NCBI RefSeq assembly: GCF_039654945.1
Contig: NW_027361676.1
Location: forward strand, 41,292,001-41,356,000
DNA from: Dendrobates tinctorius
Taxonomy: Eukaryota
Direction: 5' to 3'
DNA: 64,000 nt
The position numbers and the translations under genes were made by a program. Numbering within the stretch: position 1 is the stretch's first letter; each line of letters opens with the position of its first letter. Shown in pieces: positions 12,623 to 32,589 of this stretch. The notes under the pieces were generated by a model. That model saw only the letters and a program-made list of their open reading frames with translations, was not told where the DNA came from and did no database searches.

Positions 12623-14071
12623 GAACCATAGCAGAACTGTATGCAGAAAGAAATAGTAACAAAAACAGGATCAGAGACTCTCTGGTCAGACAGCATACAA
12701 CATTATTTACTTCACTCATTGAAGAACTGGTTCAATGCTAAATGACTTAGGCAACATCCTGAGAAAAGCAAAAGATCAGCCTATCAATTTTTTTTCCTTC
12801 AGTCCTGACAGTTTATAGACATTTGTGTTTAATAACACGTTTTACCCATCTTTGTTCAAGGCTCTTCAATGGGAAAACCCATACAAAATCTACCATGGTA
12901 TATGGATGAACCCCATTTTGATTCTATGAGGTACATTACACAATATATCCGCCATTATAGCTTCCTTTATTGAAATCACAACACAGTAAAGGTTTTTCAC
13001 TTTACTGGAATCTCGACCTGACCAGTTCACAAAGTAATTTGGATTATAGAAAGGTTGCAGTTATGTTATGATACAATTATAATTTGCTAAAAAAGAGATA
13101 AATACCTTGTAAAAATCCCTGAGCTCCCCTTATTCCACTGCCCTTTTTTGTTTTATGCTGTCGCCCCATTGCAGAGATATACACATTTGTTGCTTTTGGA
13201 GGACACTATGTGAAATCTCTACTTGTAGACTAACTGGGCGTTTCTTCGGAATCTTCTCTGCTTGCGTTTTCACCCCTCCCAGATAATGTCAGTCACAGCT
13301 CGACAGCTTTTTAGACTATATGAACAACTTCACAGCTGTGATTGGCAGCATCTGGGAGGGAGGCGAGAAAGCGCACGCCCCTAGAGGAGACTCTGAAGAA
13401 ATGCCCAGTTGATCTGCATTTCACATAGTGCGCTGCAAAAACAACAAATGTGAATATCTGTGCAACATGGTAACCCAACGCAAAATGGAAAAGAGAGACA
13501 GAATCAGGGGAACAAAGGATTGTTTACAAGGTATTTAACCTAATTTTTTGACTGGTCCTTAGTGTTGAGCATTCCGATACCGCAAGTATCGGGTATCGGC
13601 CGATACTTGCTGTATCGGAATTCCGATACCGACTTCCGATATTTTTTCAATATCGGAATTCGGCATCGGAATCGGAAGTTCAGTTGATTGACGGCCTGAC
13701 GTCATCATGATGCGCGGTGTGTGCGCATCATGATGCGCCGTCATTTCGGGCCTTCCGGGGGTCTCTGCCGGCCTGCCGGGGGGCTGTGTGGACTGCCCGG
13801 GGTCTGTACCGGCCTGCCGGGGGGCTGTGCCGGCCTGCCGGTGGTCTGTGCACCCTGTGGGGGTCTGTACCGGCCTGCCGGGGGGCTGTGCCGGCCTGCC
13901 GGGGGGCTGTGCTGATGTCCGGGGGTCTGTGCAAGCATCGTCCGATGGGACTACAAGTCCCATCGGGCGATGCCTGCTACCATGACAGTGATTGACACAT
14001 TAGCCAATGATGGGACAGTAGTAGTCCCATCATCCGGCTAATGTGTTAAATGTTAAAAAAAAAAAAAAAAA

Positions 14072-14800
14072 ATACTACATGCATGCTACATACATACTAC
14101 ATGCATGCTACATATATACTACATACATACTACATACATGCTACATACATACTGCATGCTACATACATACTACATACATACTACATACATACTACATACA
14201 TACTACATATATACTACATACATACTACATACATGCTACATACATACTGCATGCTACATACATACTACATACATACATACTACATACATACTACATACAT
14301 GCTACATACTGCATGCTACATACATACTACATACATACTACATGCATGCTACATACATACTACATATATACTACATACATACTACATACATGCTACATAC
14401 ATACTACATACATACTACATGCATACTACATATATACTACATACATACTACATACATGCTGCATGCTACATATATACTACATGCTACATACATACTACAT
14501 GCATGCTACATACATACTACATATATACTACATGCATGCTACATACATACTACATACTACATATATACTACATACATACTACATATATACTACATACATA
14601 CTGCATGCTACATACATGCTACATACATACTACATACATACTACATACATACTACATGCATGCTACATGCATGCTACATGCATGCTACATACATACTACA
14701 TGCATGCTACATACATACCACATACATACTACATGCTACATACATACCACATATATACTACATACATACAATACATTCATACAATACATACATAGACATA
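14072..14800 (+). repeat. Compound (TACA/TAC/TGCA)n microsatellite, left arm of the palindrome
   Basis: tacatacatactacatgcatgc... read directly; explains the spurious H/T/Y ORFs. Confidence 0.95.
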
Positions 14801-15409
14801 CAGTACATATAACATAGAGTAACATACTTACCAATACTTGTCACATTGTTCCCCGAAGCCATTGTCTATTCCGGGATAAATATTAACATAACAAACCACA
14901 AAAATACTCACCCACGATCCGAAGCAGTCCACGAGTGTGTCCCACGACGATCTTGGGTAGAGAACGGCAGCATCAGATGATGCTGCCGTTCTCTACGGGC
15001 TGCAGGAATCCAATGACGGAAGGTAGGTATCCTTCCGCACTGTATTCCTCCGCCACTTAAAAAAAAAAAGTCCCTAGTCTCACTTTATGCCATTGCTGTG
15101 TGGGAATTTCCCACACAGCAATGGCATAAAGTGAGACTAGGGACTTTTTTTTTTTTAAGTGGCGGAGGAATACAGTGCGGAAGGATACCTACCTTCCGTC
15201 ATTGGATTCCTGCAGCCCGTAGAGAACGGCAGCATCATCTGATGCTGCCGTTCTCTACCCAAGATCGTCGTGGGACACACTCGTGGACTGCTTCGGATCG
15301 TGGGTGAGTATTTTTGTGGTTTGTTATGTTAATATTTATCCCGGAATAGACAATGGCTTCGGGGAACAATGTGACAAGTATTGGTAAGTATGTTACTCTA
15401 TGTTATATG

Positions 15410-16092
15410 TACTGTATGTCTATGTATGTATTGTATGAATGTATTGTATGTATGTAGTATATATGTGGTATGTATGTAGCATGTAGTATGTATGTGGTAT
15501 GTATGTAGCATGCATGTAGTATGTATGTAGTATGTATGTAGTATATATGTAGTATGTAGTATGAATGTAGTATATATGTAGTATGTATGTAGCATGTAGT
15601 ATGTAGCATGCATGTAGTATATATGTAGTATGTATGTAGTATGTATGTAGCATGCATGTAGTATATATGTAGTATGTAGCATGTAGTATGTATGTAGCAT
15701 GCATGTAGTATGTAGCATGTAGTATGTATGTAGCATGCATGTAGTATATATGTAGTATGTATGTAGTATGTATGTAGCATGCATGTAGTATGTATGTAGC
15801 ATGTAGTATGTAGCATGCATGTAGTATATATGTAGTATGTAGCATGTAGTATGTATGTAGCATGCATGTAGTATATATGTGTTATGTATGTAGCATGTAG
15901 CATGCATGTAGTATGTATGTAGTATATATGTGGTATGTATGTAGCATGCAGTATGTATGTAGCATGCATGTAGTATATATGTAGTATGTATGTTGCATGT
16001 AGTATTTATGTAGTATGAATGTAGCATGTATGTAGTATGTAGTATGAATGTAGCATGTATGTAGTATGCATGTTGTATGTATGTAGCATGTA
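15410..16092 (-). repeat. Compound (TGTA/GTA/TGCA)n microsatellite, right arm of the palindrome
   Basis: Reverse-complement counterpart of 14072-14800. Confidence 0.95.
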
Positions 16093-17220
16093 ATTTTTTT
16101 TTTTTTTTTTACATTTAACACATTAGCCGGATGATGGGACTACTACTGTCCCATCATTGGCTAATGTGTCAATCACTGTCATGGTAGCAGGCATCGCCCG
16201 ATGGGACTTGTAGTCCCATCGGACGATGCCTGCACAGACCCCCGGAGCCTGCACAGACCACCGGCAGGCCGGCACAGCCCCCCGGCAGGCCGGCACAGCC
16301 CCCCGGAGCCTGCACAGCCCCCCGGCAGGCCGGCACAGCCCCCCGGCAGGCCGGCACAGCCCCCCGGAGCCTGCACAGCCCCCCGGCAGGCCGGCACAGC
16401 CCCCCGGCAGGCCGGCACAGCCCCCCGGAGCCTGCACAGACCACCGGCAGGCCGGCACAGACCACCGGAGCCTGCACAGACCCCCTGGCAGGCCGGCACA
16501 GCCCCCCGAAAGGCCCGTACAGACCCCAGAGAGGCTGTACAAGGGCAGGAAAGGGTTTTTCTTATTCCGATACCGGAAGTCCCATAGACTTGAATGGGAC
16601 TTCCGGTATCGGAATCGGCGATACCGATACTTTTTTTAAAGATCGGCCGATACCATCCGATACGATACTTTGAAGTATCGGACGGTATCGCTCAACTCTA
16701 CTGGTCCTCTTTAACAATTGTACCCTCCTTAGTATTAGTGAGGTGCAACTGAAACAACATATTATACAGTGTTCTGCATACAAGGAAAGCGAGTTAAGTC
16801 TCTTCACTTTCATTATACCTACCACATAATATACAGACTCTCAGCAGGAATAAGCCTCACTGGTATTAATGCTGTAAATCTGAGGAGGGTGAATACACAA
16901 CACTTTGGCATATATAACCCACTCATATCTAAGCTCAGATCGAGCCACTTGTGCATAATAAAATAACTTGTAAACTCTATAGCCAAGAGCAGAACCACCG
17001 TGTGTATAACAGGTGCACGGCACAGATGCCAAGTGGCTGCATACAGTACAGAAACAATGCAGCTCCGTGCTGCTTCTTATAGAGACATCAAAGTGACACT
17101 CCCCAGGTGTCCTGGCTCCGCTACCGGCAGAATTGCTTTGTGGTAATACACTGCCATCACCTACAGCCCTGCTCATGTTACAGGTCCATTCTATGGCATA
17201 TTAATCAAGAAGTTCATTTA

Positions 17221-17700
17221 CAGTGGGTACAGAAAGTATTCAGACCACTTTAAATTGTTCACTCTGTTTCATTGCAGCCATTTGGTAAATTCAAAAAAGT
17301 TCTTTTTTTTCTCATTAATGTACACTCTGCACCCCATCCTGATGGAAAAAAACACAAATGTAGAAATGTTTGCAAATTTATTAAAGAAAAACTGAATTAT
17401 CACATGGTCATAAGAATTCAGACCCCCTGCTCAGTACAGAGTAGAAGCCCCCTTTTGAGTAGTACATCCATGAGTCTTCTTGGGAATGATGCAACAAGTT
17501 TTTCACACCTGGATTTGGGGATCCTCTGCCATTCTTCCTTGCAGATCCCCTCCAGTTCTGTCAGGTTGGATGGTGAACGTTGGTGGACAGCCATTTTCAG
17601 GTCTCTCCAGAGACGCTCAATTGGGTTTTGGTCAGAGCTCTGGTTGGGCCAGTCAAGAATGGTCAAAAGTTGTTCTGAAGCCATTCCTTTGTTATTTTAT
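17221..17700 (-). mobile_element. Truncated Tc1 copy (one end plus transposase C-terminus)
   Basis: TA|CAGTGGGTACAGAAAGTATTCAGACC; minus-strand ILDWPNQSSDQNPIERLWRDLKMAVHQRSPSNLTELE; parallels the first ~480 bp of the adjacent full copy. Confidence 0.85.
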
Positions 17701-17745: not shown

Positions 17746-19371
17746 CAGTGGGTACGGAAAGTATTCAGACTCCTTTAAATTTTTCACTGTTTCATTGCAG
17801 CCATTTGGTAAATTTAAAAAAGTTCATTTTTTTCTCATTAATGTACATTCTGTACCCCATCTTCACTGGAAAAAAAAACAGAAAAGTAGAAAATATTGCA
17901 AACTTATTAAAAGAGAAAAACTGAAATATCAGTCATAAGTATTCAGACCCTTTGCTCAGTATTGAGTAGAAGCACCCTTTTGAGCTAGTACAGCCATGAG
18001 TCTTCTTGGGAATAATCCAACAAGTTTTCACACCTGGATCTGGGGATTCTCTGCCATTCTTCCTTGCAGATCCTCCCCAGTTCCGTCAGGTTGGGTGGTG
18101 AATGATGGTGGACAGCCATTTTTCAGGTCTCTCTAGAGATGCTCAATTGGGTTTTGGTCAGGGCTCTGGCTGCGCCAGTCAAGAATGGTCACAGAGTTGT
18201 TCTGTGACCATCCTTTGTTATTTTAGCTGTGTGCTTAGGGTCATTGTCTTGTTGGAATGTGGACCTTCGGCCAAGTCTGAGGTTCAGAGCAGTCTGGAAG
18301 AGGTTTTCATCAATGATATCTCTGTACTTGGCTGCATTCATGTTTCCTTCAATTGCAACCAGTCACCTTGTCCCTGCAGCTGAAAAACACCCCCATAGCA
18401 TGATGCTGCAACCATCATGTTTCACTGTTATGATTGTAACGGGCAGGTGATGAGCAGTGCCTGGTTTTCTCCACACATACCGCTTAAAATTATCACCAAA
18501 AAGTACTATCTTAGTCTCATCAGACCAGAGAATCTTATTGCTCATAGTCTGGGAGTCATTCATGTGTTTTTTAGCAAACTCTATGCGGGCTTTCATATGT
18601 CTTGCACTGAGGAGAGGCTTCCGTCAGGCCACTCTGCCGTAAAGGCCCAACTGGTGGAGGGCTGTGGTGATAGTTGACTTTGTGGAACTTTCTCCCATCT
18701 CCCTACTGCATCTCTGGGGCTCAGACACAGTGATCTTGGGGTTCTTCTTTACCTCTCTCACCAAGGCTTTTCTCCCACGATTGCTCAGTTTGGCTGGACA
18801 GCCAGGTCTAGGAAGACTTCTGGTGGTCCCAAACTTCTTCCTTTTAAGGATTATGGAGGCCACTGTGCTCTTAGGAACCTTGAGTACTGCAGAAATTCTT
18901 TTGTAACCTTGGCCAGATTTGTGCCTTGCCACAATTCTGTCTCTGGGCTCCTTGGCCAGTTCCTTTGACCTCATGATTTTCATTTGGTCTGACATGCACT
19001 GTGATTTGTGAGGTCTTATATGGACAGGTGTGTGCATTTACAAATCAAGTCCTATCAGTTTAATTAAACACAGCTGGACTCCATTGAAGGAGTAGAACCA
19101 TTTCAAGGAGGATCACAAGGAAATGGACAGCATGTGACTTAAACATGAGTGTCTGAGCAAAGGGTCTGAATACTTATGACCGTGTGATATTGTAGTTTTT
19201 CTTTTTTTAATAAATTTGCAAAAATTTCTACATTTCTGTTTTTCAGTCAAGGTGGTGTGCAGAGTGTTCATTAATGAGAAAAAAAATGAACTTTTTTCAA
19301 TTTACCAAATGGCTGCAATGAAACAAAGAGTGAAAAATTTAAAGGGGTCTGAATACTTTCCATACCCACTG
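17746..19371 (-). mobile_element. Full-length Tc1 element (IR/DR type), degenerate
   Basis: TA|CAGTGGGTACGGAAAGTATTCAGAC...GTCTGAATACTTTCCATACCCACTG|TA; ~200-bp IRs with an internal AAGTATTCAGACC direct repeat; 1,626 bp. Confidence 0.92.
17956..18974 (-). pseudogene. Tc1 transposase pseudogene
   Basis: MRSKELAKEPRDRIVARHKSGQGYKRIS (paired-like HTH), [21 protein letters not shown]; split over several frames. Confidence 0.9.
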
Positions 19372-24692: not shown

Positions 24693-25544
24693 AAGTGCAT
24701 GAAAGGATAAAACTTAGCAATAAGCTCTATTTAATGAGAAAGTGTTATCAGTCTAAGCTAAATAAGGCCAAGATATGTAGTATTACATAAGAAATACTCT
24801 AGAAATTGTGGCGCGCCTGCGGGGCATTGGGGGAACATCTAAAGGATTTCCATGTTGCATTACTACTAATAAGTGAAATGAAAAAAACAAGAAATGGAGT
24901 AATATACAAAATATAAAATGTATCAAAAAACTTTATTGAACAATTATAAATACATATAGAAAATCACTGCAATTTAGGTGTAGCTCATGCTGCCATGATG
25001 TACACAGAGCCGGAGAAGGAACTATCAGGTCCGAGTAAATGATACACTTATATGTCAAAGTGCTTACCCATGATGTGGATATAAGTATGCCAAGGAGCCA
25101 GGCACGATCCCGCCGCGCGTTTCATCTTGGCTTTGTCAAGAAGGGAATTCTTGTTATGTTATGATTAGAGTTGAGCGAAACGGGTCGAAAAAATTCAAAA
25201 GTCGCCGACTTTTGGCAAAGTCGGGTTTCATGAAACGAAACCCGACCCTAGGATGAGGTCGGTCACGAGGTCGGCGACTTACGCACCAAAGTCGCGTTTC
25301 AAAAGTTTGTTTTGCGCTCTTTTTCAGCCAATCAGGATCCACGGACACTGTGGGCAACGTGATGACATAAGCACGGGTCACCACCATCTTTCAGAAGGGC
25401 ATGCAAGTGATTGGCTTGCTTTGGTGGGCGTCACAGGGGGTATAAAAGGGCGTGCACGCCGACCGCCATCTTACTTCTGCCGATCTTAGTATAGGGAGAG
25501 GTTGCTGCTGATTCTGTAGGGAGAGCGTTAGGCAGGGAAGAAGA

Positions 25545-25953
25545 CAAAAAAACTGCTTCTGCTGCTAGCGATTTGGCCTGCACAACACACCAGTCACTGT
25601 GTGTGCAGTGCAAGGGGAGGCTATATAGTGGTGTATCAGTGGTGTTGGTTGTTGGGCTGCCTTTTAAGGCTTCCTGACAGGCTGGCATTGCTGTTTACCC
25701 ACTGCTCCGCAAACTGCTTTTTTAAAAGCAATCCCAATTTTTTTTTTTTGTCCTGCTGAGAAGAAAAAAAACTGCTTCTGCTGCTAGCAATTTGGCCTGC
25801 ACAACACACCAGTCACTGTGTGTGCAGTGCAAGGGGAGGCTATATAGTGGTGTATCAGTGGTGTTGGTTGTTGGGCTGCCTTCTAAGGCTTCCTGACAGG
25901 CTGGCATTGCTGTTTACCCACTGCTCCGCAAACTGCTTTTTTAAAAGCAATCC
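25545..25953 (+). repeat. Two-copy ~219-bp direct repeat in the hAT 5' region
   Basis: aactgcttctgctgctagc... at 25551 and 25770. Confidence 0.9.
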
Positions 25954-26863
25954 AATCTCCCTTATCCTCTAGTCACTTTTGTCACAGCTGTGCCATCGAG
26001 CCTGTCACATAGCGCTCAGATATTCATTGGGCCTCACACAATCCAAAAGTGTCCAGTGTCCAAAAGTGTGTGCAGAGATTCAAAATCTCCCTTATCCTCT
26101 AGTCACTTTGGTCACAGCTGTGCCATCGAGCCTGTCACATAGCGCTCAGATATCAGTGGGCCTCACACAATCCAAAAGTGTCCACTGTCCACAAGTGTGT
26201 GCAGAAATTCAAAATCTCCCTTATCCTCTAGTCACTTTTGTCACAGCTGTGCCATCGAGCCTGTCACATAGCGCTCAGATATCAGTGGGCCTCACACAAT
26301 CCAAAAGTGTCCACTGTCCACAAGTGTGTGCAGAAATTCAAAATCTCCCTTATCCTCTAGTCACTTTTGTCACAGCAGTGCCATCGAGCCTGTCACATAG
26401 CGCTCAGATATCAGTGGGCCTCACACAATCCAAAAGTGTCCACTGTCCACAAGTGTGTGCAGAAATTCAAAATCTCCCTTATCCTCTAGTCACTTTTGTC
26501 ACAGCAGTGCCATCGAGCCTGTCACATAGCGCTCAGATATCAGTGGGCCTCACACAATCTAAAAGTGTCCAGTGTCCAAAAGTGTGTGCAGATATTCAAA
26601 ATCTCCCTTATCCTCTAGTCACTTTTGTCACAGCAGTGCCATCGAGCCTGTCACATAGCGCTCAGATATCAGTGGGCCTCACACAATCCAAAAGTGTCCA
26701 CTGTCCACAAGTGTGTGCAGAAATTCAAAATCTCCCTTATCCTCTAGTCACTTTTGTCACAGCTGTGCCATCGAGCCTGTCACATAGCGCTCAGATATCA
26801 GTGGGCCTCACACAATCCAAGTGTCCACTGTCCACAAGTGTGTGCAGAAATTCAAAATCTCCC
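25954..26863 (+). repeat. 129-bp tandem repeat, ~7 near-identical copies, upstream of the transposase ATG
   Basis: caaaatctcccttatcctctagtcac recurs at 26081, 26210, 26339... (period 129); gives the 43-aa repeat ORF 25979-26995. Confidence 0.95.
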
Positions 26864-26939
26864 CTGTCCTATAGACACCTTGTACCTTGTTTTACATTAC
26901 TATATAGTTTGTTGGATTTTGTCTACATTTCTACCAAAA

Positions 26940-29900
26940 ATGAGGAAGGCTGGTGGAAGAGGCCGTGGAATTGGGCGGGGGTTGGCAGCTGGTAATGATG
27001 GTGTTGGTGGTGGATCTGATGGTAGTGGCAAGAGCAAAATAGGACCGAATGCAGGAGGTGCTGACCCTGCATCATCGTCTGGCTACATAAGGCCTCGAAC
27101 GCTTAGTTTTCTAGGAGTTGGCAAACCGCTTTTAAAGCCAGAGCATCAGGAAAAAGTTTTGTCTTACATTGCTGACTCAGCCTCCAGCTCTATCGCCTCC
27201 TCATCTTCAGTTGTAAAAAGTAAAAGCACTGAGTCGTCATTGGAGGCTCATGTTCATGAACCACACCTTTCCTTGTGTCCTTCACCCCAACCAAGATTGA
27301 AGGATGACACAGGCCATACTACTGATTACTCCATGGAGCTGTTTTCACATACCATGCCTGGATTATCAAGTGAAATGGTGAATTACCCAGGCCAAGATGA
27401 ATCTGACATGGAGTGCACTGATGCACAGCCGCTGATGGATGATTCTGCTGGTACATTCACTCAGAGCACTACATTGTCCTCGCAGTGTACAGAGCCAGAT
27501 TCTGACCCTGATGAGACTCAGGTGCCCCTTCCCGCACACTATACCACCATACACGGTGACACAGAGGAAGGTGCACATGAACTAGAAGAGGAGGTGATGG
27601 ATGACCCAGTTGTTGACCCAGATTGGCATCCATTGGGGGAAGAGGGTGCTGCTTCCAATAGCTCAGATGAGGAGCATCCACAGCAGACATCGACATCGCA
27701 ACAGCTGTTATCTGGCAGGCCCGGAGCACTCCAAAGACAGGTTCCAAACATCAAAAGAGTTGCAGGACAGCTTGTCCAGAGGGTCAAAAGATCACAGCGT
27801 GCTAGGCCGCAAAATGTCTGCCAAAGTAGGAAGAGTGCAGTGTGGCACTTTTTTGAACAAAATCCTCATGATCAGGCCAAGGTTATCTGTAAGAAGTGCG
27901 CAAAGACCTTTAGCCGAGGGAAAAATCTGAAAAATTTGAATACCAGTTGCATGCTTAGACATTTAACCAGCATGCACTTGCAAGCGTGGACACAACACCA
28001 AACCTCAAGTGCCACATGTGCAACTGATCACAACGAAGGTAGTCAGCAACGCTACATTGTTTCCCCCACTGTAAGCCCACCGGTTAGCACAGCAGCAAAT
28101 GTTGAGGTGTCGTTGCAAGACCACAGCAGTCAGGGAATCCCACTGTTATATCAACGAAATACTGATTCTAGGCCATCAGAAAGAACACCAACTCCATCAC
28201 CATCATCAACCCTCTCTCAGTCCGCCCTGTCCACCGCTACTTCCACCATATGCAGCTCTCAAGTCCAGCTCACCCTCCCAGACACTATGAGTAGGTCAAG
28301 AAAGTACTCAGTCTCTCATCCGCGTACACTGGGTTTGAACGCCCACATTGCCAAACTAATCTCGTTTGAGATGATGCCCTTTCGGTTGGTGGAAAGCACA
28401 GCTTTCCACAAACTCATGGCCTATGCAGTACCACGCTATGACCTACCCAGTCGCCACTTCTTCTCTCGCAAAGCCATCCCAGCCCTCCACCATCATGTGA
28501 AAGACCGCATTGTCCATGCACTCAAGCAGTCAGTGAGCGGAAAGGTGCACCTCACAACGGATGCATGGTCCAGTCGGCATGGCCAGGGCCGTTACGTGTC
28601 CATCACTGCGCACTGGGTTAATGTGGTGGATGCAGGGTCTACAGGGGACAGCGGTGGTGGAACAGTGCTGCCTAGCCCACGGTATAGGAAACAGTTGGCT
28701 GTAGGCGTTCGACCATCCTCCTCCTCCACCTCCTCCAGAAGCGAAAGCTCGTCCACAGAGCGCAGTCGTACGAGCACTCCATCTGCAGCTGCCACTGTTG
28801 CACACGATGTGTCCCCCTATCGAGCAGCTAGTGGAAAGCGTCAGCAGGCTGTGTTGCAGATGATGTGTTTGGGCGACAGACACACCGCCGAGGTGCTGGC
28901 CGAGTACTTGAAGCGACAAACTGAGTCATGGCTGGGCAGTGTACATCTTGAGGCAGGCAAGGTAGTTAGTGATAACGGCCGTAATTTTGTGGCAGCCATA
29001 GCCCTTTCAAAACTCAGCCACATACCTTGCTTGGCTCACACCTTGAACCTGGTGGTGCAGTGCTTCCTCAAAAATTATCCGGAGTTAACAGCCCTGCTCC
29101 AGAAGGTGCGAAGACTGTGCGCGCACATCCGCCGGTCGCCTGTACACTCCGTTCGTATGCAGAAGCTGCAGCGATTGCTCCACCTTCCCAACCACCGCCT
29201 CATTATCGACATTGCAACAAGGTGGAACTCCACCCTGCACATGGTGGAGCGGCTGTGCGAGCAGAGGCAGGCCATAATGCATTTGTGGGAGGATACACGG
29301 CCAGGCACTTTGAGAGCAGACATGGAGTTGACAGGTGTGCAGTGGTCGAAGCTGAAAGACCTTTGTAAAGTCCTTCAGTGTTTTGAGGAATGCACACGGC
29401 TGGTAAGCGCAGACGACGCCATCCTAAGCATGAGCATCCCACTTATGCGTCTGCTCATGCAAACTTTGACGCACCTTAAGGAGCAGGCGTCTGCAGCCAA
29501 TGTTGATGAGGAGGAAGAGGAGGAGGGAATCCTTGATGACATTCAGCCATTGTCTGCTCAGGGACCTCTCCTGGACGAGGTGGAGGAAGAAGAGGAGGAG
29601 GAGGAGGATGATGGGGATGATTACTTAGGGGAGGAGGATGCATCTCGTGGGACAAGTGAAAATGTTGGCGTGGCAAGGTCTGGTACAGGGTTTGTGCGTG
29701 ACTGGAGGGATGTGGATTTGCCAGAAAGTGCTCCTCCACCCAGCACTCACAGTGCATCATTGACACCGGGAACATTGGCCCACATGTCAGATTATGCCTT
29801 GCGGATCCTAAAAAGGACCCCCGCATTGCCAAAATGATGAACGATGACGACTACTGGTTGGCCAGCATCCTGGATCCACGCTATAAAGGCAAATTACAAA

Positions 29901-30481
29901 ACATCATGCCACAGGAGAACCTTGACCTAATATTGGCTAATAAACAAGCAACTCTGGTAAATCGGTTGCTTGAGGCATTCCCAGCACACAGCAGCGGTGA
30001 TGGTTCTCACACGAGCCGTACGGGCCGGGGGCAGCTTGGCAGAGGTGTTCGTGGTGCACACAGCAGAAGTGGCATTGGAGACAGGGGTTTCATGACAATG
30101 TTGTGGACTGATTTTTCAAATACCGCTCACACAACTGGTAATACTGCATCGATGGAAAGTGACAGGAGACAGCAGTTGTCAACTATGGTAACAAACTACT
30201 TTTCCTCCCATATCGATGTTCTCCCACACAGGTCATTCCCCTTTGACTATTGGGCCGCTAAACTGGACACCTGGCCTGAATTGGCCCAATATGCCTTACA
30301 GGAGCTCGCTTGCCCAGCTGCAAGTGTGCTATCGGAAAGAGTCTTCAGTGCAGCTGGATCAATCCTGACAGAAAAAAGGACCCGTCTGTCAACCCAAAAT
30401 GTGGATGATCTAACCTTCATTAAAATGAACCACGCATGGGTTTCCAAGGATTTTGTCCCACCTTCCCCTGATGACACATAG
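26940..30481 (+). CDS. hAT transposase (BED zinc finger, DDE, hATC dimerisation domain), ~1,180 aa if one 1-bp frameshift at ~29810-29816 is corrected
   Basis: ATG 26940 (MRKAGGRG). BED finger SAVWHFF...ICKKC...MLRHLTSMH; TTDAWSS (D1); VVSDNGRN (D2); CLAHTLNL (CxxH); TRWNS; second frame LDPRYK...CPAASVLSERVFSAAG (E)...RTRLS. Adding one base gives ...ILK(R/K)DPRIAKMMNDDDYWLA and joins ORFs 26754-29837 and 29834-30481. Confidence 0.93.
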
Positions 30482-30900
30482 GGTGACAGAAAAATGGCTT
30501 GCTTTGGTCCACCTCTTCCTGGTACTTCACCTATTTCGCCTTTTGCATCAGCTGAATGTCCAACATCAACATATGCCACTTTCTAAAACTCCCTAACTGT
30601 GCTGCCTCCCCCCCATGGCCGGGGTCACCACCTACCGCACGACACCCTGCGAGTGCCGTTGCCCTGGACAGGTGGGTAGGCCGACTCTTGGGCGCGGGCA
30701 CTGGCACAGGGTCCCTCATAGTGCAATCAAGTGTCTCTGACGGTGGTGGTGCACACCCGCCGTCAGACACACCGCTGTACTATGAGGGGCCCAGTGCCAG
30801 TACCGACGCCCACGAGTGGGCCCCCCTTGCTTGGGCAGGGCCCCAGCATTTGCAATCTTTACCTCTCCCTGCTCCTCCGCTGTGTAATCTGGGCCGTCAA

Positions 30901-31290
30901 ATCCATACTGTGCCTGACACCGTCTGAGCCTGCCTCCTGAGACATATATTTTGAATGTGTACGCTATCCATACATGTTATCCAGGGATACGGTACCCTTT
31001 CTAACCTTTGTGCAATCACGTGCAATCCATACTGGGCCTAACACCGTCTGAGCCTGCCTCATGCTGTATAGACATATATTTTGAATGTGTACGCTATCCA
31101 TACATGTTATCCGGGGATACGGTACCCTTTCTAACCTTTGTGCAATCACGTGCAATCCATACTGGGCCTAACACCGTCTGAGCCTGCCTCCTGAGACATA
31201 TATTTTGAATGTGTACGCTATCCATACATGTTATCTGGGGATACGGTACCCTTTCTCACCTTTGTGCAATCACGTGTAATCCATACTGGG
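30901..31290 (+). repeat. ~124-130-bp tandem repeat, 3 copies, hAT 3' region
   Basis: atccatactg recurs at 30901, 31025, 31155 and 31279. Confidence 0.9.
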
Positions 31291-32589
31291 CGTGAGAACG
31301 GCTGGCGAGCTGTTAAGCAAGCTACAGCACCTGTCCAGACAAGTACAGGGATTCCCTAGCGAGGAGACTTATTTGATTGTTTTCAATGTTGGGACAGCAA
31401 TTTTTGGGGAGCACTATACTCTGGAGAATGATAGATGGGGCCCACCATACACTGGAACATTCCAAAGGTGGACATCAGACACTGGAGCAGCATTTACAGG
31501 GCCCATTATACACTAGAGCATTAGAAATGGGGCCCATTATGTTTGGAGCATTATTTGGGCCCATAAGACAGTGGAGCTTCATCCATGGGGACCAACATAT
31601 ACTGTAGCATTATGTGGAGCTCATCATATACTGTTTCAAACATTATATGGGACCAATGATTCTGTATGGAGAAATAGATGGGCCTCGTCATGAGATGTAA
31701 AAAGTGAGGTATTTTTCATTGTACTATACCGCTATTTCTCTGCCGTATCGGAGCATGATGAGTTGTGGTATGTGTTAAAGGGGCGCTCTTTCGCCCAGGG
31801 CACATGAAAACCTGGAGCCAGCCCTCCTCCCCCACAGTTTGTAGCCAAATAACCCCCATTTTTCAGTGCGTAACTTGTATTATGAAGTTAATTAAGGTTG
31901 ACAAGCTTAAGAAAGAAGAATTGATGCTTTTGGCATTCAAATGGGCACTGTAGGTGTGTTTCCTGTCCTCCTCTCACTGCCGACTTTTATTCCCCATTGA
32001 CTTACATTGGGTTTCGTGTTTCGGGACGACCCCGACTTTTCCCTATAATCGGACGGTCTTGCTCGATCCGACTTTTGGAAAAGTCGGGTTTCACGAAACG
32101 AAACGCGACCCTAAAAAACCAAAAGTCGCTCAACTCTAGTTATGATACCTTAAACTGATACTTGGAGGCAGGTTTCAGATAGTCTGGTCTCCAGCTCTGT
32201 GTACATTATGGCAGCATAAGCTACACCTAAATTGCATTTGCTTTGATACCCTGATATTGTTTTTCATATTGCTGCCTTGGCGCGCATGTTTCTGGGGACC
32301 AATTGTCTTAATAATTTCTACCATGATGTTTTCATTATGACTGTATATATGCTATTATGTATGCCCTGGACCCATGCTTTTTACTAGGGTGATGTGTCCT
32401 CTTTGTGCTACTTTTTTGTGAACAGTGATTTTCTATATGCATTTATAATTGTTAAATAAAGTTTGATACTTTTTATATTTTGTATATTACTCCATTTCTT
32501 GTTTTTTGCTTTTTTTTTTCATATTGTGTAGGCGTATACAACTACCTTCCATGCTCAATTACATGGGGAAATACAAATACTGTATTTAA

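What the first reader, a model, noticed from the sequence alone, without database searches (positions are those of the whole stretch)
13560..16700. 3.1-kb hAT element that is essentially one giant palindrome with a 1-nt spacer and satellite-filled arms
Seen: clean TIRs and an 8-bp TSD enclose inverted arms centred on T15107 (...tgtgggaa T ttcccacaca...). The inner ~300+ bp unique segments appear identical apart from an A-run length. Each arm then carries ~700 bp of TACA microsatellite, a poly-A, small hairpins and a GC-rich ~21-bp minisatellite, with different repeat arrangement in the two arms. Known: long spacerless palindromes extrude cruciforms and are fragile, and transcription gives long dsRNA. 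Inference: arm-to-arm conversion homogenises the core while the satellites slip independently; this is a Foldback-like architecture in a hAT.
Basis: partly seen in the sequence, partly recalled or inferred. Interest (0 to 1): 0.7.

Follow-up and report, generated by a model that had tools for sequence, protein, structure and literature searches.

The report
Gene-less hAT transposon carrying giant palindrome
A 3.1-kb gene-less jumping element of the hAT type in a poison-frog genome has an interior that is an almost spacer-free 2.8-kb mirror-image palindrome filled with simple repeats; it is real and unusual for hAT, but whether its two halves actively correct each other could not be tested here.

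Summary
Window 13560-16700 is a 3141-bp insertion with 11-bp terminal inverted repeats (10/11 match) and a perfect 8-bp target-site duplication, CTGGTCCT.

About 2.78 kb of its interior (13749-16527) is an inverted duplication centred on T15107:
- The 367 bp on each side of the centre are identical except for one homopolymer length (A11 versus T12).
- A 136-bp outer unique block differs by one substitution.
- Between these lie an 11-mer (TACA-type) array, 738 versus 680 bp with scrambled unit order, an A18/T17 run, and a 21-bp GC minisatellite (8 versus 14.7 copies).

The last ~190 and ~170 bp are ordinary asymmetric hAT ends, packed with CCGATAC motifs. A separate 7-kb element in the same window has the same TIR and encodes BED-finger and hAT-dimerisation domains.

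Reading: this is a young copy of a non-autonomous hAT family that is moved in trans and carries the palindrome as cargo. "Foldback-like" fits the architecture; the element is not a member of the Foldback family. Arm-to-arm conversion is neither needed to explain this copy nor excluded.

This scan has already noted the same family at several other places in this genome.

The parts
13552..13559 (.). left copy of the 8-bp target-site duplication, CTGGTCCT
   Evidence: identical to 16701-16708
13560..13570 (+). left terminal inverted repeat, TAGTGTTGAGC
   Evidence: matches the reverse complement of 16690-16700 at 10 of 11 positions
13571..13748 (+). left subterminal region: CCGATAC/GTATCGG and TCGGAAT motif cluster arranged as small hairpins (13571-13621, 13620-13672), then a left-specific hairpin segment (13703-13735)
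   Evidence: motif positions, local inverted repeats, and only ~70% gapped similarity to the right end
13749..13932 (+). left 21-bp GC-rich minisatellite, 8.0 copies, 61-bp higher-order period
   Evidence: unit listing
13933..14053 (+). left outer unique block with two local hairpins (13931-13977, 14007-14033)
   Evidence: one substitution (A13934 versus G16230) against its mirror 16111-16231
14055..14072 (+). left A18 run
14072..14809 (+). left tandem array, period 11 (ATACTACATAC; reads as a TACA-type microsatellite), 738 bp
14740..15106 (+). left arm of the identical core, including a perfect 19-bp-stem hairpin at 14957-14996 and an A11 run at 15059-15069
15107..15107 (.). centre of symmetry (T) in the context GGGAA-T-TTCCC
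   Evidence: perfect complementarity for 48 nt on each side
15108..15474 (+). right arm of the identical core (mirror of 14740-15106), with a T12 run at 15145-15156
15413..16092 (+). right tandem array, period 11 (TGTATGTAGTA), with a 29-bp higher-order period, 680 bp
   Evidence: unit order largely different from the left array
16094..16110 (+). right T17 run
16111..16231 (+). right outer unique block with two local hairpins (16131-16157, 16187-16233)
16228..16527 (+). right 21-bp GC-rich minisatellite, 14.7 copies, 61-bp higher-order period
   Evidence: unit listing
16528..16689 (-). right subterminal region: CCGATAC/GTATCGG motif cluster and hairpins (16564-16615, 16648-16690)
16690..16700 (-). 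right terminal inverted repeat (TAGAGTTGAGC on the minus strand)
16701..16708 (.). right copy of the 8-bp target-site duplication, CTGGTCCT

Best explanation
This is one recently inserted copy of a non-autonomous hAT-superfamily DNA transposon in a poison-frog genome.

**How it moves (inferred).** It is cut and pasted in trans by a hAT transposase. That transposase would recognise the 11-bp TIRs TAG(T/A)GTTGAGC and the two asymmetric ~170-190-bp subterminal regions, which are dense in CCGATAC/GTATCGG motifs. This is the kind of subterminal repeat that BED fingers bind in Hermes. Integration made the 8-bp duplication CTGGTCCT.

**The interior.** Positions 13749-16527 carry no gene. They are an inverted duplication of one ~1.39-kb module: GC minisatellite, two hairpins, A-run, 11-mer array, 367-bp unique core. 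The two copies are joined head to head at T15107. The palindrome is cargo, not the transposase substrate.

**When the palindrome arose (inferred).** It most likely existed in the master copy and was transposed as such. This rests on unverified scan notes of other copies with the same design.

**Differences between the arms (shown).** They are the ones that arise fastest: reshuffled tandem arrays, homopolymer lengths, and a single point change. That fits a young copy and does not require arm-to-arm conversion.

**Expected consequences (inferred, not tested).** Single strands and transcripts should snap back into a stem of several hundred bp. That makes the element a potential source of dsRNA and small RNAs, and a cruciform or replication hazard.
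For: - **Insertion signature:** TSD and TIR.
- **hAT link:** the same TIR, identical over 11-13 nt, ends an independent 6973-bp element (25166-32138). That element has its own perfect 8-bp TSD, GTTATGAT, and ORFs matching zf-BED (1.5e-11) and Dimer_Tnp_hAT (2.4e-12).
- **Subterminal motifs:** 12 of the window's 16 CCGATAC/GTATCGG copies lie in the two ends of this element.
- **Known hAT requirement:** Hermes needs ~220 bp of asymmetric, STR-bearing ends, and Tol2 needs 200/150 bp (PMC10368747).
- **No coding capacity:** all ORFs of 60 aa or more are read-throughs of the satellites or of the palindrome, and the 69-aa centre ORF has no relative.
- **Palindrome metrics:**
- **Youth:** perfect TSD; 0/367 and 1/136 substitutions between the arms; CpG observed/expected of 0.86 in the core and 1.5-1.85 in the ends, against 0.51 for the window and 0.18-0.52 in the flanks.
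- **Against an assembly fold-back:** the flanks are not mirrored. The two ends are different sequences. The arms differ by many indels.
- **Possible high copy number:** 37-43% of the sampled 31-mers occur in very small runs (8-165 Mb) of the same species from four further studies. This fits a high-copy family, although microsatellite words could contribute.
Against: - No second copy could be read, so family membership, copy number and the age of the palindrome relative to transposition rest on unverified notes of this scan.
- The matching transposase is not identified. The 7-kb hAT in the window shares the TIR but has different subterminal motifs (CGACTT/CGAAAC type), so it is probably not the direct partner.
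- One TSD position (C at position 7) departs from the nTnnnnAn preference of Ac-type hATs (my own knowledge).
Confidence: 0.8

Rival explanations
1. One reading: the arms are kept identical by recurrent intramolecular gene conversion (arm-to-arm copying), as in large sex-chromosome palindromes, while the satellites slip independently.
For: - The unique parts of the arms are 99.8-100% identical, while the arrays between them are thoroughly rearranged.
- The outer unique block, 1.05-1.19 kb from the centre, is as well preserved as the core.
- An earlier follow-up on another copy (s1-366803) reached this reading. That is unverified and is not independent evidence.
Against: - Tandem arrays and homopolymers mutate orders of magnitude faster than single bases (established knowledge). 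The same pattern is therefore expected in a young palindrome without any conversion.
- The A11/T12 difference sits inside the otherwise identical core, 38-49 nt from the centre, so no conversion tract has crossed it since it arose.
- The perfect TSD and high CpG content also point to youth.
Confidence: 0.3
2. Assembly or read artefact: a fold-back chimeric long read, or a mis-join, created a palindrome that does not exist in the animal.
For: - Spacer-less palindromes are a known product of fold-back chimeric reads (my own knowledge).
- Read-level confirmation failed here.
Against: - A fold-back artefact mirrors everything up to the break. Here the two flanks are different unique DNA sharing only the 8-bp TSD.
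- The two ends are distinct left and right hAT ends.
- The arms differ in array length and order, in minisatellite copy number and in homopolymer lengths.
- The scan notes the same design at several other loci (unverified).
Confidence: 0.04
3. Two separate elements lying head to head, or one inserted into another, rather than a single element with an internal inverted duplication.
For: Each half carries the same module order.
Against: - There is no TIR-like sequence and no TSD at or near the centre. TAGWGTTGAGC occurs only at the two outer ends of this region.
- The join is base-perfect for 48 nt on each side.
- The single 8-bp TSD brackets the whole 3141 bp.
Confidence: 0.03
4. The palindrome was born from a hAT excision hairpin.
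1. A nested hAT excised from a non-palindromic progenitor.
2. The transposase-made hairpin on the donor flank was not opened at its tip. It was instead copied round.
3. This gave an inverted duplication with the hairpin's single unpaired apex base at the centre.
4. The copy-back strand rejoined the other side within the GC minisatellite.
For: - hAT transposases leave hairpins on the flanking DNA (PMC5499845).
- In Kat1 the hairpin forms 1 nt from the TIR (PMC4763223). By my recollection of Zhou et al. 2004 (not held in the library), the Hermes nick is 1 nt into the flank, which would leave one unpaired apex base.
- The centre is an odd palindrome.
- The inferred 8-mer GTGGGAA+A fits nTnnnnAn (direct reading; about 1 in 16 by chance).
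- The outer boundary of the high-identity palindrome falls in the minisatellite, whose copy number is unequal (8 versus 14.7).
Against: - The centre is AATTT, so a one-base slip in an even palindrome gives the same picture.
- No progenitor or nested element was seen.
- A template switch during gap repair would also produce such a join.
- The model needs a progenitor with inverted minisatellites at both ends, which is not shown.
Confidence: 0.15

Closest known systems
Non-autonomous hAT elements (Ds of maize Ac/Ds, deletion derivatives of Tol2 and Hermes; vertebrate hAT-N families)
   Same: - 8-bp TSD.
- Short TIRs beginning TAGNG.
- ~170-190-bp asymmetric ends full of short subterminal repeats.
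- No transposase gene, so mobilised in trans (PMC10368747).
   Different: Usual non-autonomous hATs are internal-deletion derivatives or short MITEs. Here nearly 90% of the element is a 2.78-kb near-spacerless inverted duplication filled with two kinds of tandem repeat, and it shows no similarity to the hAT coding element in the window.
Foldback elements of Drosophila (FB) and Tetris of D. virilis
   Same: - Long inverted arms built largely of tandem repeats, with variable array sizes.
- No coding capacity in most copies.
- Snap-back behaviour.
- Tetris has 8-10-bp TSDs (PMC4079207).
   Different: - In FB and Tetris the arms are the terminal inverted repeats and reach the tips, and there is usually a middle domain. 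They are assigned to the Mutator superfamily (PMC4079207).
- Here the tips are short hAT TIRs with asymmetric ends, the palindrome is internal, and there is no middle domain.
Galileo (P superfamily) of Drosophila
   Same: It shows that a foldback-like architecture can arise independently inside a superfamily that normally has short TIRs (PMC3688188, PMC4168063).
   Different: Galileo has long TIRs up to ~1.2 kb that carry transposase (THAP) binding sites, and full copies encode a transposase. It is also in a different superfamily (P, not hAT) and, by my own knowledge, makes 7-bp TSDs.
Mu killer of maize (an inverted duplication of part of MuDR); from my own knowledge
   Same: An inverted duplication of transposon sequence whose transcript is a long hairpin. 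This is the model for how such a palindrome could feed small-RNA silencing.
   Different: Mu killer is a single rearranged locus of a Mutator element and is not itself mobile. Here the palindrome sits between working-looking hAT ends, and no transcription has been shown.
Palindromic transgenes and long inverted repeats studied in mouse and yeast
   Same: Near-spacerless inverted repeats hundreds of bp to kb long.
   Different: Those are reported to be break-prone and to be stabilised by spacers of tens of bp or by asymmetric central deletions (PMC8701086). This copy keeps an intact centre with at most one unpaired base.

Membership tests
hAT superfamily (non-autonomous member) | 8-bp target-site duplication | tested here: met
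   CTGGTCCT at 13552-13559 and 16701-16708
hAT superfamily (non-autonomous member) | short terminal inverted repeats (about 10-25 bp) beginning (C/T)A(G/A)NG | tested here: met
   TAGTGTTGAGC and TAGAGTTGAGC, matching at 10/11 positions
hAT superfamily (non-autonomous member) | termini shared with an element that encodes a hAT transposase | tested here: met
   The first 11-13 nt are identical to both ends of the 25166-32138 element (8-bp TSD GTTATGAT), whose ORFs match zf-BED and Dimer_Tnp_hAT. The subterminal motifs differ, so that element is a relative, not a proven partner.
hAT superfamily (non-autonomous member) | asymmetric subterminal regions with multiple short repeats (transposase-binding type) | tested here: met
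   12 of the window's 16 CCGATAC/GTATCGG copies lie within 13571-13689 and 16564-16689. The two ends are only ~70% alike, with indels.
hAT superfamily (non-autonomous member) | actual mobilisation by a hAT transposase (excision footprints, polymorphic empty sites) | not testable with these tools
Foldback elements (FB/Tetris type, Mutator superfamily) | long inverted arms that are themselves the terminal inverted repeats and reach the element tips | tested here: not met
   The high-identity arms stop ~190 bp (left) and ~170 bp (right) from the tips. The tips are short hAT TIRs with dissimilar subterminal DNA.
Foldback elements (FB/Tetris type, Mutator superfamily) | arms composed largely of tandem repeats | tested here: met
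   About 920 bp (left) and 980 bp (right) of each ~1.39-kb arm is tandem array
Foldback elements (FB/Tetris type, Mutator superfamily) | Mutator-type ends and TSD (9 bp in FB, by my own knowledge) | tested here: not met
   8-bp TSD and hAT-type TIR
MITE | miniature size (under ~800 bp) | tested here: not met
   3141 bp
Known RNA families (miRNA precursors and others, Rfam 15) | match reaching the family's gathering score | tested here: not met
   Best hit is 61.7 bits against a gathering score of 74 (MIR6288, across the centre). All hits are generic perfect-hairpin matches below threshold.

The most novel reading that the evidence does not exclude
The single central base may be the apex nucleotide of a hairpin that a hAT transposase made on donor DNA. 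On this reading the family is a heritable record of an unopened excision hairpin copied into a 2.8-kb palindrome. That palindrome then became mobile and multiplied in a vertebrate genome, even though long spacer-less palindromes are expected to be unstable. Its arms may in addition be kept alike by intramolecular conversion.
Probability: 0.12. Interest if true: 0.75.

Novelty: new variant of a known kind. Interest (0 to 1): 0.5.

Why it matters
Foldback-type architecture has been tied to the Mutator and P superfamilies. My text searches of the held literature found no hAT element described this way, including in the poison-frog genome papers.

A multi-copy family of kb-sized, nearly spacer-less palindromes in a vertebrate would be useful in three ways:
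- It would be a natural test bed for how long palindromes survive replication and repair.
- It could show whether intramolecular conversion acts on small mobile palindromes as it does on sex-chromosome palindromes.
- It could show whether such elements feed dsRNA-based transposon silencing in giant amphibian genomes.

For this single copy the practical value is modest. It is one clean, young, well-delimited example, and it sets out exactly what has to be measured next.

Tried and rejected
The filter says this is no evidence of anything. Rfam, repeat, fold and findings look-ups were run beside them, and only local alignment scripts read the arrays.
2. **Other copies inside the window:** blastn of the element against the window found none outside 13560-16700.
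4. **Exact-pattern scans** of metagenome contigs and genome contigs, using the centre and two internal hairpins, gave 0 hits in all four. Those collections are essentially microbial, so this says nothing about frogs.
5. **The search of earlier findings by sequence** came back blank.
6. **Rfam:** only sub-threshold generic hairpin hits, so I rejected a known RNA gene.
7. **Head-to-head pair of elements:** rejected, because there is no TIR or TSD at the centre.
8. **Assembly fold-back:** rejected as unlikely, because the flanks and ends are not mirrored.
9. **The 7-kb hAT at 25166-32138 as the direct autonomous partner:** not accepted. The TIR is identical, but the subterminal motifs differ and there is no internal similarity.
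10. **Hermes structural papers** (PMC6212770, PMC4105704) are not held. The 1-nt offset of the Hermes nick therefore rests on my memory and on the Kat1 paper.
Full report
**What is there**

Reading 13400-16900 and checking it by script shows a 3141-bp insertion at 13560-16700.
- It starts with TAGTGTTGAGC and ends with the reverse complement of TAGAGTTGAGC, a 10/11 match.
- It is bracketed by a perfect 8-bp direct repeat, CTGGTCCT (13552-13559 and 16701-16708).
- In the whole 64-kb window the TIR pattern occurs with no mismatch at only four places. Two are the ends of this element. The other two are the ends of a second element at 25166-32138.

**The palindrome**

- Around T15107 the sequence is perfectly self-complementary for 48 nt on each side. 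No neighbouring centre gives more than 2 nt.
- Continuing outward, 14740-15106 and 15108-15474 are identical but for one homopolymer length: A11 at 15059-15069 versus T12 at 15145-15156.
- Next comes a tandem array in each arm: 14072-14809 (738 bp) and 15413-16092 (680 bp). TRF's best period is 11 (ATACTACATAC), which also reads as a TACA-type 4-mer.
- I split the arrays into units and compared their order. The two arms are largely rearranged relative to each other. The observed global score is 860, against 789 +/- 19 (maximum 850) when the right-arm units are shuffled. Left- and right-specific higher-order patterns are visible.
- Outside the arrays lie an A18/T17 run and a 136-bp unique block holding two local hairpins. 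That block differs between the arms at one base, A13934/G16230.
- Then comes a GC-rich 21-bp minisatellite with a shared 61-bp higher-order period: 8.0 copies on the left (13749-13932) and 14.7 on the right (16228-16527).
- As single-stranded DNA, 14740-15474 folds into one ~366-bp stem of -470.7 kcal/mol, z = -65 against shuffles.

**Where the palindrome stops**

The outermost ~190 bp (left) and ~170 bp (right) are not part of the high-identity palindrome.
- Aligned in inverted orientation, they share the TIR and a series of short modules (TCCGATAC, GTATCG, GGTATCGGCCGAT, ATTCCGATACCG).
- Their similarity is only about 70%, with many indels.
- Each holds an end-specific stretch of 45-65 bp before homology resumes at the first minisatellite unit.
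- Twelve of the window's sixteen CCGATAC/GTATCGG copies sit in these two ends, mostly arranged as small hairpins.

This is what hAT ends look like. Hermes needs about 220 bp of each end, with asymmetrically arranged subterminal repeats bound by BED fingers. Tol2 needs 200 and 150 bp (PMC10368747).

The element thus has two tiers: ordinary, old, asymmetric hAT ends, and a much more uniform interior inverted duplication.

**Why hAT**

- The element codes for nothing. Every ORF of 60 aa or more is a read-through of a satellite or of the palindrome. The 69-aa ORF across the centre has no relative in the word-indexed protein collection.
- The superfamily assignment rests on the 8-bp TSD, the TAGNG-type short TIRs, the subterminal repeats, and a relative in the same window.
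- That relative is the 6973-bp element at 25166-32138. It has the same terminal 11-13 nt at both ends and its own perfect 8-bp TSD, GTTATGAT. Its ORFs match zf-BED (E = 1.5e-11) and the hAT C-terminal dimerisation domain (E = 2.4e-12).
- Its subterminal motifs are different (CGACTT/CGAAAC type), and it shares no internal sequence with the palindromic element. I therefore treat it as evidence for the superfamily, not as the partner transposase.

**Real or artefact**

There is therefore no read-level proof for this locus.

The structure itself argues strongly against a fold-back chimera:
- The flanks are not mirrored.
- The ends are distinct left and right ends.
- The arms differ in array length and order, in minisatellite copy number and in homopolymer lengths.

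The run index adds weak support. Four runs of one sample hold 90-91% of the sampled 31-mers; this is probably the source animal. Very small runs (8-165 Mb) of the same species, from four other studies, hold 37-43%. That is hard to get from such thin data unless much of the stretch is high-copy. Microsatellite words may contribute, however, so I do not lean on this.

**Family context (leads, not tests)**

Earlier notes of this scan describe the same design elsewhere in the same poison-frog genome: hAT ends, a giant palindrome, a 1-nt centre and satellite arms. At least seven other places are noted, with sizes of 2.3-3.8 kb. One follow-up called the family very high-copy and read the arms as kept alike by copying.

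I could not read any of those copies. All of the following failed:
- in-window search;
- exact-pattern scans of the metagenome and prokaryote genome collections;
- the findings look-up by sequence.

The scan has therefore found this family before on other DNA. My report adds this copy's exact anatomy and a critique of the conversion inference.

**How it most likely works**

*Shown:* the insertion signature, hAT-type ends, the absence of genes, and a 2.78-kb interior inverted duplication with near-identical unique blocks and rearranged arrays.

*Inferred:*
- It is moved in trans by a hAT transposase acting on the ~180-bp ends, with the palindrome riding as cargo.
- The palindrome predates this insertion, because other copies reportedly share it.
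- This copy is young. The TSD is perfect. There are 0/367 and 1/136 substitutions between the arms. CpG observed/expected is 0.86 in the core and 1.5-1.85 in the ends, against 0.51 for the window and 0.18-0.52 in the flanks.
- With roughly one substitution in ~500 bp between the arms, a vertebrate-like rate of about 1e-9 per site per year (my assumption) puts the arms' common state on the order of a million years ago, with a wide error.
- Arrays of ~60 units and homopolymers mutate orders of magnitude faster than single bases. Scrambled arrays beside identical unique DNA are therefore what a young palindrome should look like without any conversion.
- The A11/T12 difference sits in the middle of the identical core, so no conversion tract has crossed it since it arose.

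Arm-to-arm conversion thus stays possible (I give it about 0.3), but nothing here demonstrates it.

**Origin of the palindrome (speculative)**

- hAT transposases excise by making hairpins on the flanking donor DNA (PMC5499845). In the domesticated hAT transposase Kat1 the hairpin forms 1 nt from the TIR (PMC4763223).
- By my recollection of Zhou et al. 2004, which is not in the library, the Hermes nick lies 1 nt into the flank. That leaves one unpaired base at the hairpin apex.
- Copying such a hairpin into duplex would give exactly an odd palindrome with one central base.
- The 8-mer implied at the centre (GTGGGAA plus A) fits the nTnnnnAn target preference.
- The outer limit of the high-identity palindrome lies in a minisatellite with unequal copy numbers. 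That is where a copy-back strand could rejoin the other side.

Against this:
- The centre reads AATTT, so a one-base slip in an even palindrome would look the same.
- A template switch during gap repair could also produce the join.
- No progenitor was seen.

I give this origin about 0.15.

**Comparison with known systems**

- Foldback architecture is documented for FB and Tetris, assigned to Mutator (arms are the TIRs, tandem-repeat domains, a middle domain; Tetris TSD 8-10 bp; PMC4079207).
- It is also documented for Galileo in the P superfamily. The literature already suggests that the architecture evolves independently in different superfamilies (PMC4079207).
- My searches found no hAT element described this way. 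The two poison-frog genome papers mention hAT only as a bulk class (3.91% of the D. tinctorius assembly; 255 Mb in O. pumilio) and mention no palindromes.
- This element works like a foldback element in its snap-back arms and satellite content, but it fails the membership test for that family. Its arms do not reach the tips, its TIRs are hAT-type, and its TSD is 8 bp.
- It passes every hAT test I could run.
- Long near-spacerless palindromes are reported to be break-prone in yeast and mammalian cells, and to be stabilised by spacers of tens of bp or by asymmetric deletions (PMC8701086). An intact centre in a mobile, multi-copy family is therefore the most interesting aspect.
- Frog embryos do make small RNAs from transposon remnants (PMC3875865). 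Whether this element is transcribed was not tested.

**Verdict**

The element is a real, young, gene-less hAT carrying a giant internal palindrome. It is a new variant of known kinds (non-autonomous hAT combined with foldback-like architecture), and this scan has already met the family elsewhere in the same genome. The conversion claim and the origin of the 1-nt centre remain open, and both can be tested directly by a genome-wide comparison of copies. Interest is 0.5.

Noticed in passing
window 25166-32138: A 6973-bp hAT element with the same 11-13-nt termini (TAGAGTTGAGCGA) and a perfect 8-bp TSD, GTTATGAT. ORF 26754-29837 carries a BED zinc finger, and ORF 29834-30481, in another frame, carries the hAT dimerisation domain. 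The coding region is therefore split at ~29.83 kb by a frameshift or an intron (not resolved). Its subterminal motifs are of the AAGTCGG/CGAAAC type, unlike those of the palindromic element.
   Followed up: partly
window 18624-19037 (minus strand): A 137-aa ORF matching the Sleeping Beauty-type transposase HTH domain (E = 6.5e-25) and HTH_Tnp_Tc3_2: a Tc1/mariner fragment about 2 kb downstream of the palindromic element. The neighbourhood is transposon-rich, and no host gene was recognised in the ORFs scanned between positions 1 and 25000.
   Followed up: partly
window 13749-13932 and 16228-16527: Nearly every 21-bp minisatellite unit carries a run of 5-6 G: 7 such runs on the plus strand in the left arm and 11 C-runs in the right arm. 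Each arm therefore has G-quadruplex potential on opposite strands.
   Followed up: no
window 13931-13977 and 16187-16233: The local 22-bp-stem hairpin in the outer unique block keeps the same internal T/C mismatch in both arms. The only arm-specific substitution (A13934) adds a second mismatch in the left copy only.
   Followed up: partly
The filter message says it also trips by chance. They were left alone in all later searches.
   Followed up: no
window 12800-17400 (run index): Two other coded species hold 16-18% of the sampled 31-mers, and four more hold 6-7%. This could mean that relatives of the family exist in related frogs, or merely that microsatellite words are shared.
   Followed up: no
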